IMG/VR virus record: IMGVR_UViG_3300032236_002285
Coordinates: 62,001-126,000 of that record
Length of the DNA stretch: 64,000 nucleotides
Strand: one strand, 5' to 3'
Shown: piece by piece, positions 1,890 to 8,661 of the stretch
How positions within the stretch are numbered: the stretch's first letter is position 1
How the letters are laid out: each line of letters opens with the position of its first letter
The notes under the pieces: model-generated
The model's input: the letters and a program-made list of their open reading frames with translations, nothing else
What the model was told of the DNA's origin: nothing
Databases searched by the model: none
Translations under genes and position numbers: made by a program

Positions 1890-2576
1890 ATGAAAAAATA
1901 CTTACTTATTGAGGTAAATTCTGATGATGATATCATTGTTAAGTACTTTGATGATTTAACTGATGTACATTCTTATGTTTGTCATGAGTTAATGTACGAG
2001 GACTTAGATATAGAAGATTTTAAAAATGACCCATATGGTAGTGTTGAAGAAAGAATTGAAGAACATGAGTCAAGTTTTTACTTATTTGAAGATGAAAAAG
2101 AATTATTTCATTTGATAATAGGTGATATAAAACAAGGTGATTGGGATAAATTTACAGATTTATGTTTAAAAACTATGAAAGAAAGTAAAATTATGAACTT
2201 TAAATTGTTCACAGAGGGTAAAAAAGACAAATTTCCTAATATTCAAAAAGTTGATATTGATGGATTTGTTGTTTATGTTGGTAAAGATGCTAAATCTAAT
2301 GACCACTTAACATTTAATGTTGCTGATAAAGAAGATATATGGATGCATGTTAAAGGTGTTCCTGGCTCACACGTTGTTATTCGTGTTAGAGAAAATCTAC
2401 CTGCTGAAAATGTTATAAAAGCAGCAGCACAATTGGCTAAAAAGAATAGTAAAGCTTCTAAAGATGATAGTGCTACTGTTGTTTATTGTCAAAGAAGATT
2501 TGTTAAGAAAGAACCTGGTATGAATGATGGTCAAGTTAAAGTTGATTATACAAATTCATATCAAATTGTAGTTTAA
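1890..2576 (+). CDS. NFACT-R (DUF814) RNA-binding domain protein with an acidic N-terminal extension
   Basis: VYVGKDAKSNDHLTF, DIWMHVKGVPGSHVVI, AAQLA and VVYCQRRFVKK match NFACT-R. Confidence 0.8.
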   Translation: MKKYLLIEVNSDDDIIVKYFDDLTDVHSYVCHELMYEDLDIEDFKNDPYGSVEERIEEHESSFYLFEDEKELFHLIIGDIKQGDWDKFTDLCLKTMKESKIMNFKLFTEGKKDKFPNIQKVDIDGFVVYVGKDAKSNDHLTFNVADKEDIWMHVKGVPGSHVVIRVRENLPAENVIKAAAQLAKKNSKASKDDSATVVYCQRRFVKKEPGMNDGQVKVDYTNSYQIVV

Positions 2577-2611
2577 TAATTAATATATACACTAATAAAA
2601 TAAATTAAGAA

Positions 2612-3967
2612 ATGGCTGATAAAAAATCTACACGAGTTAAATTTTCTGAAGAATTACATGATTTACTAAGAATCCTTGAGGATGATGGTAGTTATGTTGC
2701 TTTTGAATTACTTTGGTTAAATGAACCAGATTCAAAATATCATAATGGATTAGATGTTGAAGATGTTGATATATCCAAAACAAGATCTTGCTTAGATGTT
2801 AATATTAGAGGTAGAGTTCATCCTATGAAAATAGAAAACTTTATTAAATATTTTTTCAAAAATTATTTCCAATCAGATGTTGTTTTAGATTTTATTGAAC
2901 AATATAACATATTAGCTGGTGGTGGCGGTGAGTTACAAGATACAAGAACTAAAATTATACCAGAACCTTTTAAATATAATCCTAAAGACGTTAGAAGTAC
3001 ATTTATTTCATTAGTTACTAAAACATATCCACACGGACATGAAGAAGAAGTTATGCAGTTTATGCCTAAATTGGATAAAGATTCTGTGGGTAACTATTAT
3101 AAAATTATTGGTGAGAATCCAACAACTATGTTTACATCTCACTTAGATACTGCTGATAGAAAACAAGGAATCACTAAACTTCTTTCAATGAAAGACGAGA
3201 ATGGTGATGAAATTATCTATACTGATGGTTCTACTATCTTAGGTTCGGATGATAAAGCCGGTGTTGCTGTTATGTTATATATGATGGCTCATAATATACC
3301 GGGTCTTTATTATTTCTTTATGGGTGAAGAAAGAGGTGGTATCGGTTCAGGTTTACTTTCTTCTGTGTATGATGAAACTCCTTATCTTAAAAATATTAAA
3401 AGGTGCGTTTCATTTGATAGAAGAGATGTTAAATCGGTTATTACTTCTCAATTAGGTAGAACTTGTTGTTCTGATACATTTGGTACTGCTTTATGTAAAG
3501 AATACAATGCTCATGGTCTTAAATTATCTTTAGATCCTACGGGTATATACACAGATTCTGCTTCATTTATTGACCAGATTCCTGAGTGTACTAACATTTC
3601 TGTTGGTTATTATAATGAGCATACTGGTAAAGAAAGACAAAACATTAACTATTTAGAGAGATTAGCTAAAGCAAGTGTTTTGGTTAATTGGAATTCTCTA
3701 CCAACTGCTAGAAAGATAGGAATTGATGAGGAAGTTATCAGAAAATATGGTAGATTCATTAATGAGCTAAAGGCTACTCCAATGGGAATTGATATCAAAG
3801 TTATGGCTGAAGAAGGTGGTGGTACTGTAATTGCTTGTGATATGGAAGAGGGTTATATTGATGCAACGTATGAGTCACTGACAATGTTACAATTCTTATT
3901 AAATAAACATAAAATCAATCAAACAGTATATTTTGATGGTGATTATATAAAAATAGATTTATCATAA
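2612..3967 (+). CDS. M20/M28-family Zn peptidase-like protein (paralog 1)
   Basis: FTSHLDT, LGSDDKAG, GEERGGIGS, SFDRR, TDS and HT metal-ligand motifs. Confidence 0.8.
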   Translation: MADKKSTRVKFSEELHDLLRILEDDGSYVAFELLWLNEPDSKYHNGLDVEDVDISKTRSCLDVNIRGRVHPMKIENFIKYFFKNYFQSDVVLDFIEQYNILAGGGGELQDTRTKIIPEPFKYNPKDVRSTFISLVTKTYPHGHEEEVMQFMPKLDKDSVGNYYKIIGENPTTMFTSHLDTADRKQGITKLLSMKDENGDEIIYTDGSTILGSDDKAGVAVMLYMMAHNIPGLYYFFMGEERGGIGSGLLSSVYDETPYLKNIKRCVSFDRRDVKSVITSQLGRTCCSDTFGTALCKEYNAHGLKLSLDPTGIYTDSASFIDQIPECTNISVGYYNEHTGKERQNINYLERLAKASVLVNWNSLPTARKIGIDEEVIRKYGRFINELKATPMGIDIKVMAEEGGGTVIACDMEEGYIDATYESLTMLQFLLNKHKINQTVYFDGDYIKIDLS

Positions 3968-5001: not shown

Positions 5002-5325
5002 ATGTCTAAACACAATAATAAATACTGGTTGAGAGAAAAGCAATACCGTTCTTTACTAAGAGAGCGTGAATCTATATGGGATGAAACCACTTGGAGATAC
5101 GGTCTTAGATCTCAACATAAAAGACTTCAAGAGATATATGAAATCTTAAAGCAAAGATTCTACGATGAAGAATATGGCTGGTATCAAACTGCGCCTAAAC
5201 ATTATCGTAAAACCTTGAACCGTATCCAAAGAGCTAAACAAAAACAAGTAATGCACAAAATTATCTCTGGTGAAGAAAACTTTGTTTTTGAGGATAGTTA
5301 TAAAGATGCTCCTTGGTACTGGTAA
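5002..5325 (+). CDS. Hypothetical basic protein ending PWYW
   Basis: 107-aa ORF; TATATTTG at 4938-4945 upstream. Confidence 0.7.
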   Translation: MSKHNNKYWLREKQYRSLLRERESIWDETTWRYGLRSQHKRLQEIYEILKQRFYDEEYGWYQTAPKHYRKTLNRIQRAKQKQVMHKIISGEENFVFEDSYKDAPWYW

Positions 5326-5354
5326 ACTTTATCCTATTCATTAATATAATAATT

Positions 5355-5873
5355 ATGATTGATAAATTTGAAGGTCGTTGGAGATTTCTTTCTAATTTCT
5401 ATGCTTGTCGTATAGAACACCAAGGTATTACATATCCTTCGGTTGAACACTTCTATGTAGCGATGAAAGTAAATGACCAACAACTAATTGATGGTAGATA
5501 TTACACACCTGGTGATTTCAGAGAAATGATTGCTAGGATTTCTAATCCAGGTTCGGTTAAAAGAATTGGCTCTAAAGTTAAGCTAAGAAGTAACTGGGAT
5601 GAAAAGAAATTAGATATTATGAATTGGGCCGTTCGTCAAAAATTCAAAGATGAATCTTTAGCTCAAATGTTATTATCTACTGATGGTCAGGAATTAATTG
5701 AAGGTACTTACTGGCATGATAAATTCTGGGGTATATGTACCTGTGCAAAGTGTTCTAATAAGGGTGAAAACCACTTAGGTAAGATTCTTATGCAAGTAAG
5801 AGAAGAATTAAAATTAGCACATCAAAAACCTTCAATAGAAGATATAATAAAAGATAAAAATAAATTAAATTAA
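5355..5873 (+). CDS. NADAR (YbiA/DUF1768) family protein
   Basis: FLSNFY, YPSVEHFYVAMK, LRSNWDE, RQKF, LIEG-YWHDKFWG and GENHLGKILMQVR; start revised from TTG 5313 to ATG 5355. Confidence 0.9.
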   Translation: MIDKFEGRWRFLSNFYACRIEHQGITYPSVEHFYVAMKVNDQQLIDGRYYTPGDFREMIARISNPGSVKRIGSKVKLRSNWDEKKLDIMNWAVRQKFKDESLAQMLLSTDGQELIEGTYWHDKFWGICTCAKCSNKGENHLGKILMQVREELKLAHQKPSIEDIIKDKNKLN

Positions 5874-5883
5874 TTTATTTTTT

Positions 5884-5913
5884 GATAGTAGGTTAAATTA
5901 CTTCGGAGGGAAA
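5884..5913 (+). pseudogene. Remnant copy of the methyltransferase 5' end (SRLNYFGGK)
   Basis: tac ttc gga ggg aaa (YFGGK) mirrors tat ttt ggt ggc aag at 6775-6789; no start codon in frame. Confidence 0.6.
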
Positions 5914-5936
5914 TGGTATTTTTTTATATATAGTAT

Positions 5937-6758
5937 ATGAGAAAATTAAAAGACCTATCTGATATTGAAAAATCAGAAATTTTAAATCAAAGAAAACTTG
6001 GAACTACAGAAAAAGAAATATCATCTAAATTTGATATTTCTTTAAGGCAATATTATAACTTATTGAAGCTAAATAACGTTGAAAGAAAAAACAAAGTAGT
6101 TAGGTATAATTTTGATGAAGATTATTTTGAATCTATAGACACTGAAGATAAAGCTTACTTTTTGGGATTTATTGTTGCTGATGGTTGTATTAGTGATAAG
6201 ACAAATACTATTAAGATAATACAGAAGGAAATTGATATATTATATGAATTTAAAAAGTATATTAATTCAGACGGTGGTATATTTACATCAAAAAATAGAA
6301 ATATTTCAAGCTTTAGTGTATCATCTGCTAAGACTAAAGATGATCTTGAAAAGTTGGGAATACATTCAAATAAAACAATGGTTGTTAAATATCCAAGTAT
6401 TCCTGATAATTTACAAAATCACTTCATGAGAGGTGTCTTTGATGGAGATGGTTGTATTACATTGAGAACAGATAAAAGAGACAATCAACAAAGAGGACAA
6501 GTAAATATATGTTCAGGTAGTTATGATTTTATAAAAGAATATTATGATAAATTAGTATTATTTGCTAATTTATCAGGTAGGAATAAAATAAGATGCCCTA
6601 AAGGAACATATCATGTGGTTGACTGGGGTGGTTTATCAGATGTTGAGAATATTTATAATTTTTTATATAAAGACTCAACTATATACCTCAAACGAAAAAA
6701 AGAAACTTTCGAAAAAGTAATTAGTATAACTAAAGATAAAAATAAATATAGAAAATAA
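5937..6758 (+). mobile_element. Free-standing double-motif LAGLIDADG homing endonuclease with N-terminal HTH
   Basis: YFLGFIVADGCI and HFMRGVFDGDGCI motifs; C-terminal YLKRK; own TTATATATA motif upstream. Confidence 0.9.
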
Positions 6759-6759
6759 T

Positions 6760-7746
6760 ATGGCATGTATAAGTTATTTTGGTGGCAAGAGTTCATCAGT
6801 ATTCCAAGAGTTTATTAACTCAAAAATCCCTAAAGATGGTACTATTAAAACGTATTTAGAACCATTTTCTGGCTCAATGGGAACGTATATGGACGACCCA
6901 AAACTAAAGTTTGATGTAGTTATCTATAATGATAAAAATCGTCACCAGGTGAACTTATATAAGTGTTGTGCTCAACCTGAAATCTTTGCTCAGCATTTAG
7001 AGAATCTTAAAAATACTTTACTTCATACAACTGAAACTGATCCGTTAAAAAAGTGGGATTTTTACAAAGCTATTTACAAAGAGTATATTAAGAATGATTT
7101 CTTAGATGACATGAACTTTGAGATTGGTGATTACGAAAAAGCGGCTATCTATGCTTTCTTAATTACTTCAGCTCACAATTCAGTTTATCCTCGTGGTGCT
7201 GGTTTTAATGGTTATAAAAAAGATAAAGACCGTTTGAAATTAGAAGTTCTTATTAAGAAGTTAAAAAAGAATGATTATACAGATAAGTTAAAATCTATTA
7301 CAGAATATCTTAATATTGACTTTGAAGAGTTGATTAATAAATACGACGCAGAAGATACTTATATGTATTTAGATCCACCATATGCTCGTTTTGATGAGGC
7401 TAAAGGTGAAGATGATGCTAAAAGATTGTTCTGGTATGGTGCAGATAAAGATGGTATGTTTGGACCAGCTTCTCATAGAAGATTATTAGAACTAATTAAA
7501 AAATCCAAATCTCGTTGGTCATTATCTTATTACTATTTTCCTTTGTTAGAAGAATTGTTACCAAGAGACCAATATATCTGGACTGAAAAAGAAGTATTTA
7601 GAAGTTCAGCTCAAGGTGGTAATAACTCAGATGGTAAAGGTGAACAAGCTAAAGGTGTTGAGTTGTTGATTATGAACTACGATCCAGCTACTGGTAAAAA
7701 ATTAAACATTCAAGATGGTGTATCCGTTACCGAGACAAAGATATAA
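6760..7746 (+). CDS. Dam-like DNA adenine methyltransferase
   Basis: SYFGGK, YLEPFSGS (motif I), YLDPPY (motif IV), ELLIMNY. Confidence 0.9.
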   Translation: MACISYFGGKSSSVFQEFINSKIPKDGTIKTYLEPFSGSMGTYMDDPKLKFDVVIYNDKNRHQVNLYKCCAQPEIFAQHLENLKNTLLHTTETDPLKKWDFYKAIYKEYIKNDFLDDMNFEIGDYEKAAIYAFLITSAHNSVYPRGAGFNGYKKDKDRLKLEVLIKKLKKNDYTDKLKSITEYLNIDFEELINKYDAEDTYMYLDPPYARFDEAKGEDDAKRLFWYGADKDGMFGPASHRRLLELIKKSKSRWSLSYYYFPLLEELLPRDQYIWTEKEVFRSSAQGGNNSDGKGEQAKGVELLIMNYDPATGKKLNIQDGVSVTETKI

Positions 7747-7915
7747 GCATTATAAAGGTGGTACTTATGAAGTAATTACTTTAGCCACTCATACAGAAAC
7801 AGGGGAAAAGTTAGTAGTCTATAAGTCTATTAACTTTGGCTCTATTTATGTTAGACCTTTGGATATCTGGAATTCAACATCAGAAGATGGACAAAAAAGA
7901 TTTGAACTTATATGA
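7715..7915 (+). CDS. DUF1653-family protein
   Basis: RYKHYKGGTYEVITLATHTETGEKLVVYKS...YVRP...RFE. Confidence 0.85.
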   Translation: MVYPLPRQRYKHYKGGTYEVITLATHTETGEKLVVYKSINFGSIYVRPLDIWNSTSEDGQKRFELI

Positions 7916-8661
7916 GTAATATAGTTGATTTATTTAATAATAACTCTAAAGAGTTTATTGTCACCCAGCGTTGGATGGTTGAAAATAAAAACCTTACCAA
8001 CTTTGAGACTAGGAAGTTCTCAGTTCCGGTTTTAACATCAGAAATGAAAAATGAATATCTTAACATGGATATGACACCTCATCTAATTAGTGTTATTAAA
8101 AAAGAAATTAGTCAAGATGTAAATAACTTATTTAATAAAAAATTATTTACTACTAATAAGTTTGATTATTTAGATTTAAGACCTGATGGTTCTTTAATGA
8201 CAGGTAGATTATATCTTGAGAAATTGGTGAGTTTGATACTTAGTAATAATTACAAGAATTTAATTACTACTATACTTATATCTTCAGAGTTACAAGATAG
8301 TGCTTTTTTTTCGTCTTATATGACAACACATGACTTAAAGACTAGTGGTTTGCTTGAGTGTTATGGTAAATTGGGTAGTGTTGAAGTTTATGTCGACCCA
8401 TATATGAGGTATAATGATGGAAGAATATGTTTATTCAATGAAGTTGAGTTCAATATAGGCGAAATGAAGGCTTATGAGACTACACAAATTGGCTCCTTGG
8501 TTCCTAGAATTATTATAGAATATGATATTGATTATAATGTGGGAGATTCAAAATTAATCTTTGTTATTGAGAATGAAAAATCTGAGGCATATATGCAGTA
8601 TAAATCTCTACAAAGAGATATAAAAATTGACAACATTTTAGATGGCGGCACTACTTCCTAA
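7912..8661 (+). CDS. Degenerate major-capsid-derived protein
   Basis: GKLGSVEVYVDPYMRYNDGRICL vs capsid GSIGDISIYVDPYQRYNDNRIVL; ends RDIKIDNILD. Confidence 0.75.
   Translation: MSNIVDLFNNNSKEFIVTQRWMVENKNLTNFETRKFSVPVLTSEMKNEYLNMDMTPHLISVIKKEISQDVNNLFNKKLFTTNKFDYLDLRPDGSLMTGRLYLEKLVSLILSNNYKNLITTILISSELQDSAFFSSYMTTHDLKTSGLLECYGKLGSVEVYVDPYMRYNDGRICLFNEVEFNIGEMKAYETTQIGSLVPRIIIEYDIDYNVGDSKLIFVIENEKSEAYMQYKSLQRDIKIDNILDGGTTS

What the first reader, a model, noticed from the sequence alone, without database searches (positions are those of the whole stretch)
5884..6789. LAGLIDADG insertion flanked by two synonymously different copies of the methyltransferase YFGGK codons
Seen: upstream of the endonuclease, tac ttc gga ggg aaa (5899-5913; SRLNYFGGK, no start codon). 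Downstream, the live gene begins M-A-C-I-S-tat ttt ggt ggc aag (6775-6789). All five codons differ only at the third position. Known: free-standing homing endonucleases target conserved coding motifs and protect their own genome by disrupting or altering the site. Inference: the element inserted just after the original YFGGK, orphaned it, and carries a replacement, cleavage-resistant 5' end for the methylase.
Basis: partly seen in the sequence, partly recalled or inferred. Interest (0 to 1): 0.6.

Follow-up and report, generated by a model that had tools for sequence, protein, structure and literature searches.

The report
Mobile endonuclease cassette recoding a methylase start
A selfish homing-endonuclease gene sits just upstream of a DNA methylase gene in a huge phage. 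It brings its own recoded copy of the methylase's first codons. It also carries a strictly conserved 13-base look-alike of its probable cutting site in front of its own promoter box, so the upstream 'YFGGK' is part of the mobile element, not debris left by the host gene.

Summary
The codon pattern for YFGGK occurs only twice in 64 kb (5899-5913 and 6775-6789; 0.01 expected), and the two copies flank an intact double-motif LAGLIDADG endonuclease (HE).

About 90 related huge-phage contigs show empty, occupied and decayed versions of this site. In empty sites the methylase (MTase) starts M-S/A-V/C-I-S-Y-F-G-G-K, usually directly after the NADAR stop. So the downstream copy is the normal gene start.

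A near-isogenic pair (L012 with HE, L027 without) has identical flanks. The HE arrives with MTase codons 1-18 replaced, 14 substitutions in 54 nt. "Carries a replacement 5' end" is therefore supported, as co-conversion in intronless homing.

The upstream copy is not the recipient's orphaned start. It is a 13-nt element, ACTTYGGAGGGAA, fixed at -37..-25 from the HE start and 12 nt before an ordinary phage TATATA box. It is intact in 9, and one base off in a tenth, of the 11 HE lineages found without using the motif, with HEs down to 46% identical. It is absent from every empty or decayed site and from the rest of the genome.

It probably began as a copy of the MTase start. It is now most likely an operator-like mimic of the homing site, as known for I-TevI. 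That function is inferred, not shown.

The parts
5355..5873 (+). NADAR-domain gene (172 aa from the ATG at 5355). It is the upstream neighbour, and in HE-free relatives of this clade its stop lies 0-6 nt from the MTase ATG.
   Evidence: Pfam NADAR 96 bits; translation; positions in relatives.
5874..5936 (+). 63-nt leader of the endonuclease cassette. It is present only where the HE is present, and its left edge lies right after the NADAR stop.
   Evidence: L012 vs L027 boundaries; leaders of the HE+ loci.
5882..5889 (+). Leader block TTGATAGT. It corresponds to ATGAAAAT in other lineages, and may be the fossil of the MTase start codon region.
   Evidence: An ATG lies 16 nt before TAC/AAC in 11 of 18 lineages. 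A PWM built from MTase nt 1-15 gives P=0.0001 to 0.09 in those lineages, but is not significant in WIN itself (P=0.45).
5899..5913 (+). Upstream 'YFGGK' codons. The conserved core ACTTCGGAGGGAA is 5900-5912, at -37..-25 from the HE ATG. Proposed role: homing-site mimic or operator.
5925..5936 (+). TATATATAGTAT box directly before the HE ATG. It is an instance of the genome-wide TTAATATATA motif found 9-14 nt before 77 of 583 ORF starts, and is a probable phage promoter with almost no leader.
5937..6758 (+). Free-standing LAGLIDADG homing endonuclease, 273 aa: N-terminal three-helix HTH (residues 9-45), flexible linker, then a double LAGLIDADG core with both motifs and their acidic residues invariant.
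   Evidence: Pfam; alignment and dN/dS of 0.11-0.31; model and Foldseek, best match I-Tsp061I at E 1.4e-9.
6700..6759 (+). 3' tail of the HE ORF plus its stop, which lies 1 nt before the MTase ATG. In several relatives this tail survives upstream of the MTase after the HE has decayed, so it may hold signals for MTase expression.
6760..6813 (+). MTase codons 1-18: the HE-linked, co-converted 5' haplotype (MACISYFGGKSSSVFQEF).
6775..6789 (+). The live YFGGK codons, TAT TTT GGT GGC AAG. This is the recoded version of the probable homing site; naive alleles mostly read TTY GGA GGN.
6760..7746 (+). D12-class (Dam-like) N6-adenine DNA methyltransferase, 328 aa, with DPPY. It is the probable target gene of the HE.
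   Evidence: Pfam; 69 related loci.

Best explanation
Window 5874-6759 is a free-standing LAGLIDADG homing-endonuclease cassette in a ~476-kb phage. It lies between a NADAR gene and a Dam-like methyltransferase gene.

Shown: the site is polymorphic among related phages (empty, occupied, decayed). The HE is under purifying selection. It is far more similar between genomes than its flanking genes are. It is inherited together with a replaced stretch of the MTase 5' end, at most about 54-75 nt. Together these are the signature of intronless homing with co-conversion.

Inferred: the enzyme cuts HE-free MTase alleles in or next to the conserved YFGGK-coding DNA (MTase nt ~16-54). The break is repaired from an HE+ genome, copying the cassette plus the donor's recoded site, which is not cut.

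The upstream 'YFGGK' is a cassette-borne 13-nt element, ACTTYGGAGGGAA. It is fixed 12 nt upstream of an ordinary phage TATATA promoter box and keeps the naive GGA form of the site.

Inferred, about 0.4 on its own: this element is a homing-site mimic that the HE binds without cutting, and it represses the HE's own promoter, as I-TevI does. Inferred, about 0.6: it descends from a copy of the MTase start made at the founding insertion.
For: Presence, absence and decay at one site in about 90 loci.

WIN vs L012 amino-acid identity is HE 92%, NADAR 63% and MTase 86%.

Near-isogenic pair L012/L027: the flanks are identical and codons 1-18 are replaced. Sliding identities agree: L012 vs L027 is 77% in nt 1-75 but 94-100% after; WIN vs L012 is 89% in nt 1-75 but 76% in nt 76-150.

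Pair L091/L069: the only differences in 150 nt are TTC to TTT and GGA to GGG, both inside YFGGK.

Third base of Gly8: non-A in 15 of 19 HE+ lineages; A in 32 of 43 loci then tagged HE-free.

HE dN/dS is 0.11-0.31 and the catalytic motifs are invariant. The fold is LAGLIDADG.

The core sits at a fixed position in every aligned HE+ lineage. It is 85-100% identical between lineages, where four-fold sites are 23-70%, the spacer about 45% and the left flank about 35% identical.

The core is absent upstream of the MTase in all HE-free and decayed loci and is unique in the genome. All 15 IMG/VR matches to core-N12-YATATA precede this HE.

The TATATA box is a motif shared by 77 genes, none of which has a conserved element at the core's position.

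Precedent for homing-site-like operators over HE promoters: PMC2988022.
Against: Four HE+ lineages (L046, L081, L113, L124) keep GGA in the live site. The 13 nt of the L113 site equal those of naive L027, so these 13 bases alone cannot decide immunity.

In pair L091/L069, two differences in 150 nt is not more than the background divergence of the gene (4-5%). Only their position is notable, at P about 0.01. L069 may itself be an ex-HE allele (z=3.2).

One HE lineage (L082/L083, with the decayed L087) has a different leader that keeps a GGAG-rich box but not ACTTC.

The core could be an activator or polymerase contact rather than an HE operator.
Confidence: 0.7

Rival explanations
1. The HE inserted after codon 10 of this genome's own MTase. 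The upstream YFGGK is that genome's orphaned, now neutral, gene start, and the cassette supplied the new start.
For: The two copies differ only at synonymous positions. The leader is loosely collinear with MTase nt 1-30 in some lineages. Mirror-image cases exist in fungal mitochondria (PMC3630166).
Against: In L012 the upstream piece is not the L027-type recipient sequence. It is the same piece found in WIN and L018, which have different NADAR genes. It is conserved at 85-100% across HE lineages whose neutral sites are saturated, and base by base rather than codon by codon. It disappears when the HE decays.
Confidence: 0.05
2. The core is only a piece of the HE's transcription signal, such as an upstream promoter element or the site of a phage or host activator. 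It is not bound by the HE. Its likeness to YFGGK codons is a leftover of descent with no link to targeting.
For: The spacing of 12 nt to the TATATA box is fixed while the spacer sequence varies. The L082 leader keeps a G-rich box and the TATATA box but not ACTTC.
Against: None of the 77 genes with the same TATATA box has a conserved element at that position. The core occurs nowhere else in 476 kb or in IMG/VR. Thirteen near-invariant bases is far more information than a usual polymerase contact carries. The core also keeps the GGA form typical of HE-free alleles.
Confidence: 0.25
3. The HE recognises the stop/ATG junction itself, that is, the insertion point, as intron and intein HEs do. Insertion alone destroys the site, and the changed MTase codons are only hitchhiking donor sequence.
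For: The HE always sits immediately before the MTase ATG. Some HE+ alleles have naive-like YFGGK codons.
Against: Sequence to the left of the insertion point is unrelated between lineages: different NADAR tails, and in L067 and L091 a gap of 0.35-1.3 kb between the NADAR match and the HE. Conversion is one-sided: WIN, L012 and L018 have nearly identical leaders directly against different NADAR tails, yet share 48-54 nt or more of MTase. This places the break to the right of the insertion point.
Confidence: 0.12
4. The protein is no longer a nuclease. It is a domesticated LAGLIDADG-plus-HTH regulator, like WhiA, that controls the neighbouring MTase, and the core is its operator.
For: It combines an HTH with a LAGLIDADG core, and WhiA is among the fold matches. 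The HE stop lies 1 nt from the MTase ATG.
Against: Both LAGLIDADG motifs keep their acidic residues in all lineages. Presence/absence polymorphism, decay remnants and co-conversion tracts are marks of an active mobile element. Most relatives run the same MTase without it.
Confidence: 0.05
5. Chance resemblance between an unrelated leader motif and the YFGGK codons.
For: The genome is AT-rich with low complexity. Eight unrelated matches to the strict pattern exist in 241 million metagenome records.
Against: Only 0.01 matches are expected per window, and the second match lies within 900 nt of the first. The naive MTase site is 11-12 of 13 identical to the core.
Confidence: 0.02

Closest known systems
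Free-standing homing endonucleases of T4-type phages (SegA-G, MobE) and 'intronless homing'
   Same: The HE gene sits between conserved genes with its probable target in the neighbouring gene. It shows presence/absence among relatives, and flanking donor sequence is co-converted into the recipient (PMC2988022; this locus).
   Different: The family is LAGLIDADG; the T4 review lists only GIY-YIG and HNH for free-standing enzymes. The inferred cut lies within about 80 nt of the insertion point rather than hundreds or thousands of bp away, and the tract is very short. The host is an uncultured ~476-kb phage.
[quoted passage not shown]
   Same: A sequence resembling the homing site sits at the promoter just upstream of the endonuclease ORF. 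In I-TevI it is bound but poorly cut (PMC2988022). Here a 13-nt look-alike of the probable site lies 12 nt upstream of the promoter box.
   Different: Those are GIY-YIG or HNH enzymes inside group I introns. Here neither binding nor repression has been tested, and the enzyme is a free-standing LAGLIDADG with an N-terminal HTH.
Mobile endonuclease ORFs (mORFs) of fungal mitochondria that create gene hybrids (Allomyces atp6; Glomus atp6, atp9, cox2, nad3)
   Same: The endonuclease ORF travels with a foreign copy of a gene end, and a second diverged copy of that gene end lies on the other side of the ORF (PMC3630166).
   Different: In fungi it is the 3' end, and the orphan is the recipient's native piece, nearly identical to close relatives. 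Here it is the 5' end, and the second copy is only 13-30 nt, belongs to the mobile unit, and is under selection.
Intron-encoded LAGLIDADG endonucleases of Staphylococcus Twort-like phages and related phage LAGLIDADG ORFs
   Same: These are the closest annotated protein relatives, at about 29-33% identity over more than 90% of the length.
   Different: No intron is present here: Rfam finds nothing, and the MTase is one uninterrupted ORF with its own start.

Membership tests
LAGLIDADG homing endonucleases (single-chain, two-motif) | Family profile match above the curated threshold | tested here: met
   PF14528 LAGLIDADG_3, 35.9 bits against a cutoff of 22.5.
LAGLIDADG homing endonucleases (single-chain, two-motif) | Two LAGLIDADG helices, each ending in a conserved acidic residue | tested here: met
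   KAYFLGFIVADG and HFMRGVFDGDGC; D82 and D169/D171 are invariant in 11 lineages.
LAGLIDADG homing endonucleases (single-chain, two-motif) | Duplicated alpha-beta-beta-alpha-beta-beta-alpha fold | tested here: met
   AlphaFold model with pLDDT 71.5. Foldseek finds I-Tsp061I at 1.4e-9, plus I-AniI, I-SceI and I-DmoI.
LAGLIDADG homing endonucleases (single-chain, two-motif) | Site-specific double-strand cleavage leaving 4-nt 3' overhangs | not testable with these tools
   Needs purified protein and substrates.
Free-standing HE with intronless homing | Not inside an intron or intein | tested here: met
   No Rfam match in 5300-7800. The HE and MTase are separate complete ORFs.
Free-standing HE with intronless homing | Presence/absence polymorphism at one locus among related genomes | tested here: met
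   decayed copies.
Free-standing HE with intronless homing | Co-conversion of flanking donor sequence | tested here: met
   L012 vs L027, and the 5' haplotype shared across different MTase bodies.
Free-standing HE with intronless homing | Cleavage of the HE-free allele and immunity of the HE+ allele | not testable with these tools
   Indirect evidence only: substitutions inside YFGGK, with four exceptions.
I-TevI-type autorepression by a homing-site mimic | Sequence resembling the homing site at the promoter upstream of the HE ORF | tested here: inconclusive
   The core is 11-12 of 13 identical to naive MTase sites and lies 12 nt upstream of the TATATA box. However, the true homing site and the transcription start are both inferred.
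I-TevI-type autorepression by a homing-site mimic | HE binds the operator without efficient cleavage and lowers its own transcription | not testable with these tools
Fungal-type mORF gene hybrid (foreign gene end plus native orphan) | The orphaned copy is the recipient's native sequence | tested here: not met
   The upstream piece in L012 differs from the L027 start and is shared with WIN and L018.
Fungal-type mORF gene hybrid (foreign gene end plus native orphan) | The mobile ORF carries a foreign copy of the gene end | tested here: met
   Codons 1-18 are replaced in the HE+ allele.
D12-class N6-adenine DNA methyltransferase (the neighbour and target gene) | Profile match plus the N-terminal xFGGK and DPPY motifs | tested here: met
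   PF02086, 54.2 bits against a cutoff of 22; YFGGK and LDPPYA are in the ORF.

The most novel reading that the evidence does not exclude
A free-standing LAGLIDADG endonuclease keeps a fossil half of its own homing site, the naive YFGGK-coding 13-mer, in front of its promoter and uses it as an operator to throttle its own expression. This would show that I-TevI-style autorepression arose independently in a different nuclease family and outside introns. It would also show that target debris from a founding insertion can be recruited as the element's own control site.
Probability: 0.35. Interest if true: 0.6.

Novelty: new variant of a known kind. Interest (0 to 1): 0.45.

Why it matters
This locus gives an unusually clean view, from metagenomes alone, of a full homing cycle in huge phages: empty site, invasion with a very short co-conversion tract, and decay. 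It points to one conserved coding motif of a Dam-like methylase as the target.

If the upstream 13-mer proves to be an operator, self-limitation through a homing-site mimic would be a convergent solution in selfish nucleases of different families.

There are practical uses as well. The locus offers a LAGLIDADG enzyme with a predicted target, natural sensitive and resistant alleles, and a natural bound-but-uncut candidate site, all of which help specificity studies. It also warns annotators that duplicated gene starts next to HE genes can be functional parts of the element rather than pseudogene debris.

Tried and rejected
1. Megablast of 5300-7800 against GenBank phages found nothing. Relatives were found only by protein search and in IMG/VR.

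2. Shine-Dalgarno reading of GGAGGG: rejected. It lies 27 nt from the ATG, and GGAGG occurs before 0 of 583 ORFs at -20..-1.

3. Upstream ORF reading: only the window has ATG at 5913 (MVFFYI*). Other lineages lack it.

4. RNA structure in the leader: only an AT palindrome, with no covariation. Rfam found nothing, so there is no group I intron.

5. Sigma-70 promoter scan: nothing at the leader, and fewer hits overall than in shuffles.

6. General phage promoter reading of the core: rejected. It is unique in the genome and cassette-specific in IMG/VR.

7. An early idea that AAACTTTTG...TATAAT upstream of some HE-free MTases is a promoter class akin to the core. Several of these stretches turned out to be remnants of the HE's 3' tail.

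8. Microhomology-primed homing at the core, which would leave the recipient's own start upstream: rejected by L091 vs L069.

9. A longer (~70 nt) flanking duplication that includes the NADAR tail. There is a 21/23 nt match (P 0.0005-0.005), but it was not significant in the tail-vs-upstream test (z of 2.8 or less), and the HE tail is conserved beside unrelated NADAR tails. I left it as weak.

10. The NADAR identities printed came from a query translated one base out of frame. Use instead; the positions were unaffected.

Full report
**1. What is in the window**

Reading 5400-8000 and listing ORFs gives four genes on the + strand:
- a NADAR gene (ATG at 5355, stop at 5871-5873);
- a 273-aa LAGLIDADG ORF (5937-6758);
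- a 328-aa D12/Dam-like methyltransferase (MTase), 6760-7746, which starts one base after the endonuclease (HE) stop;
- a DUF1653 gene.

The degenerate pattern occurs just twice in the window, against 0.01 expected. The upstream run has no in-frame start. The window is part of a 476-kb IMG/VR virus record with 30% G+C.

**2. Relatives and the state of the site**

GenBank has two close relatives, both uncultured phages of 634 and 642 kb, and both lack the HE. I collected further loci in four ways:
- IMG/VR gave 69 loci holding the MTase.
- It gave 14 loci found through the HE.
- A pattern scan for the leader added two more loci.
- The metagenome collection added 13 cassettes, six of them new lineages.

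Mapping the genes shows three states.
- Empty: the MTase ATG lies 0-6 nt after the NADAR stop, or after another short spacer. The protein starts MSVIS-, MAVIS- or MACIS-YFGGK.
- Occupied: a full-length HE sits immediately before the MTase ATG, with HE identity to the window ranging from 92% down to 46%.
- Decayed: only the HE's 3' tail or a truncated ORF remains (L050-53, L062, L007, L087, L057, L002, L054, L075, L061).

The downstream YFGGK is therefore the ordinary start of the gene. Empty sites contain nothing like the upstream copy.

**3. The HE is mobile and brings a new gene start**

Between the window and L012, amino-acid identity is 92% for the HE, 63% for NADAR and 86% for the MTase.

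The decisive comparison is L012 (HE+) against L027/L029 (HE-):
- The left flank is 100% identical for 500 nt, up to the NADAR stop.
- The MTase is 98-100% identical from nt 55 onward.
- In between, the HE- genome has a 3-nt spacer plus 54 nt of MTase. The HE+ genome has the 63-nt leader, the HE, and a 54-nt MTase start that differs at 14 positions, in codons 2, 3, 8, 11-14 and 16-18.

The same HE-linked start (MAC...SSSVFQEF) sits on MTase bodies of different clades in the window, L012 and L018. This is co-conversion, as in intronless homing of T4 seg and mob genes (PMC2988022).

The leaders of the window, L012 and L018 are nearly identical, yet they abut different NADAR tails, while all three share at least 48-54 nt of MTase. 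The conversion is therefore one-sided. This places the break to the right of the insertion point, inside the first ~80 nt of the MTase.

**4. Where the target probably is**

A second pair is L091 (HE+) and L069 (HE-). They share flanks at 93-100% identity. In the first 150 nt of the MTase they differ at only two bases: TTC to TTT and GGA to GGG, both synonymous and both inside YFGGK.

The one change common to both pairs is the third base of Gly8. Across 19 HE+ lineages that base is T in 7, G in 6, C in 2 and A in 4. Among the loci then tagged HE-free it is A in 32 of 43.

Three cautions apply:
- These counts are not phylogenetically independent.
- Two differences in 150 nt do not exceed the background divergence of that pair. 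Only their position is unusual.
- L046, L081, L113 and L124 are HE+ with GGA.

The target assignment is therefore a well-motivated inference, not a result.

**5. What the upstream YFGGK is**

In L012 the upstream piece is not the L027 start. It is the piece also found in the window and L018.

Aligning the leaders shows a 13-nt core, ACTTYGGAGGGAA, always at -37..-25 from the HE start. A 12-nt spacer of variable sequence follows, then TATATATAGTAT, then the ATG.

Between lineages whose HEs are 46-73% identical, sequence identity is as follows:

| Region | Identity between lineages |
|---|---|
| Core (13 nt) | 85-100% |
| TATATA box | 75-100% |
| Four-fold degenerate sites in the HE | 23-70% |
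| Spacer (12 nt) | about 45% |
| Left flank | about 35% |

The constraint acts on bases, not on codons: L046 and L067 read NFGGK, and L066 and L071 read YFGGN.

The core's distribution is strictly tied to the HE:
- It is missing upstream of the MTase in every empty or decayed site.
- It is unique in the 476-kb genome.
- All 15 IMG/VR matches to core-N12-YATATA lie before this HE next to this MTase.
- Among the lineages found without using the motif, 9 of 11 have it intact, L080 has one mismatch, and L082/83 has a different leader that keeps only a GGAG-rich box.

A neutral orphan is excluded.

**6. The promoter context**

This phage uses no Shine-Dalgarno sequences. In 77 of 583 ORFs a TTAATATATA motif starts 9-14 nt before the ATG, with the peak at -10. 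The HE's TATATA box is one of these, at the usual distance.

None of the other 76 genes has a conserved element where the core lies. So the core is an extra, HE-specific, information-rich site just upstream of an ordinary promoter box, and it carries the naive form of the probable target.

The closest known arrangement is the I-TevI operator. There a homing-site look-alike over the enzyme's promoter is bound but poorly cut, and it gives autorepression. [quoted passage not shown]

The HE model has a separate N-terminal three-helix HTH on a flexible linker, ahead of the LAGLIDADG core. This could allow binding without cutting, but nothing here tests that.

**7. Origin**

In 11 of 18 lineages the leader has an ATG 16 nt before the TAC/AAC, where the MTase has 15 nt. 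A weight matrix built from MTase nt 1-15 scores these leader segments at P=0.0001 (L046), 0.004 (L124) and 0.03-0.33 for the other nine ATG-bearing lineages; in the window's own subgroup it is not significant.

This fits descent of the leader from a copy of the MTase start, with one extra base.

A longer duplication that also includes the NADAR tail is only weakly indicated.

**8. Verdict**

- The cassette does supply a recoded gene start, and the YFGGK-coding DNA is the likely target.
- The upstream copy is a selected part of the mobile element, not this genome's abandoned start.

The locus is a new variant of a known kind: a free-standing homing endonuclease with co-conversion. Its possible homing-site-mimic operator would be new for LAGLIDADG enzymes.

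Noticed in passing
Whole genome G000 (for example window 5925-5936); statistics from 583 ORFs: About 13% of ORFs (77 of 583) carry the motif TTAATATATA starting 9-14 nt before the ATG, with a sharp peak at -10. A second, broader TATATA peak lies at -25..-32. No Shine-Dalgarno signal exists anywhere. This suggests a phage promoter class that gives nearly leaderless mRNAs.
   Followed up: partly
L050-L053, L062, L007, L057, L002, L054, L075 (the ~60-110 nt before the MTase ATG); window equivalent 6700-6759: In relatives where the HE has decayed or been deleted, its last ~55 nt often persist directly upstream of the MTase start (z 3.3-29). This tail may carry signals that the MTase needs once it is separated from NADAR.
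   Followed up: partly
L082, L083 (HE at 2501-3319) and L087: One HE lineage (70% identical) has a different leader: a GGAGAGG box, about 12 nt, a TATATA box, and then a further ~36 nt that could encode a 15-aa peptide ending on the HE start. The ACTTC part of the core is absent.
   Followed up: no
L028, L072 (MTase at 3501): These are HE-free alleles with a chimeric start. Codons 2-3 (GCA TGT, giving MAC) match the HE-linked haplotype, while codons 13 and 16 (AAT, ATT) match naive alleles, and NADAR abuts the ATG. They may be products of HE loss or of partial conversion.
   Followed up: no
window 5843-5865 vs 6725-6747: The NADAR C-terminal tail (IIKDKNKLN*) and the HE C-terminal tail (ITKDKNKYRK*) share 21 of 23 nt, in the same frame and in nearly the same register as the YFGGK pair (offsets 882 vs 876). 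P is 0.0005-0.005 by genome sampling, but the match was not significant in a second test.
   Followed up: partly
G000:C1:390208-391047 (+) and C1:184469-185182 (-): The genome holds two further D12-type methyltransferase paralogues, 29-39% identical depending on the search. The first has an in-frame TGA.
   Followed up: no
window 5913-5933: Only in this genome does the core run into a mini-ORF (ATG at 5913, MVFFYI, stop at 5931-5933). Relatives have ACT in place of the ATG.
   Followed up: yes
window 7715-7746: The DUF1653 ORF as listed by the ORF caller starts 32 nt inside the 3' end of the MTase ORF, and a similar overlap appears in many relatives. It could reflect translational coupling or an alternative MTase end: some relatives have MTases of 315-322 aa that stop earlier.
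   Followed up: no
L007 (NADAR match ends ~2769, MTase at 3501): There is a ~730-nt gap of about HE size with no detectable HE ORF apart from the 3' tail. It is probably a heavily decayed cassette.
   Followed up: no
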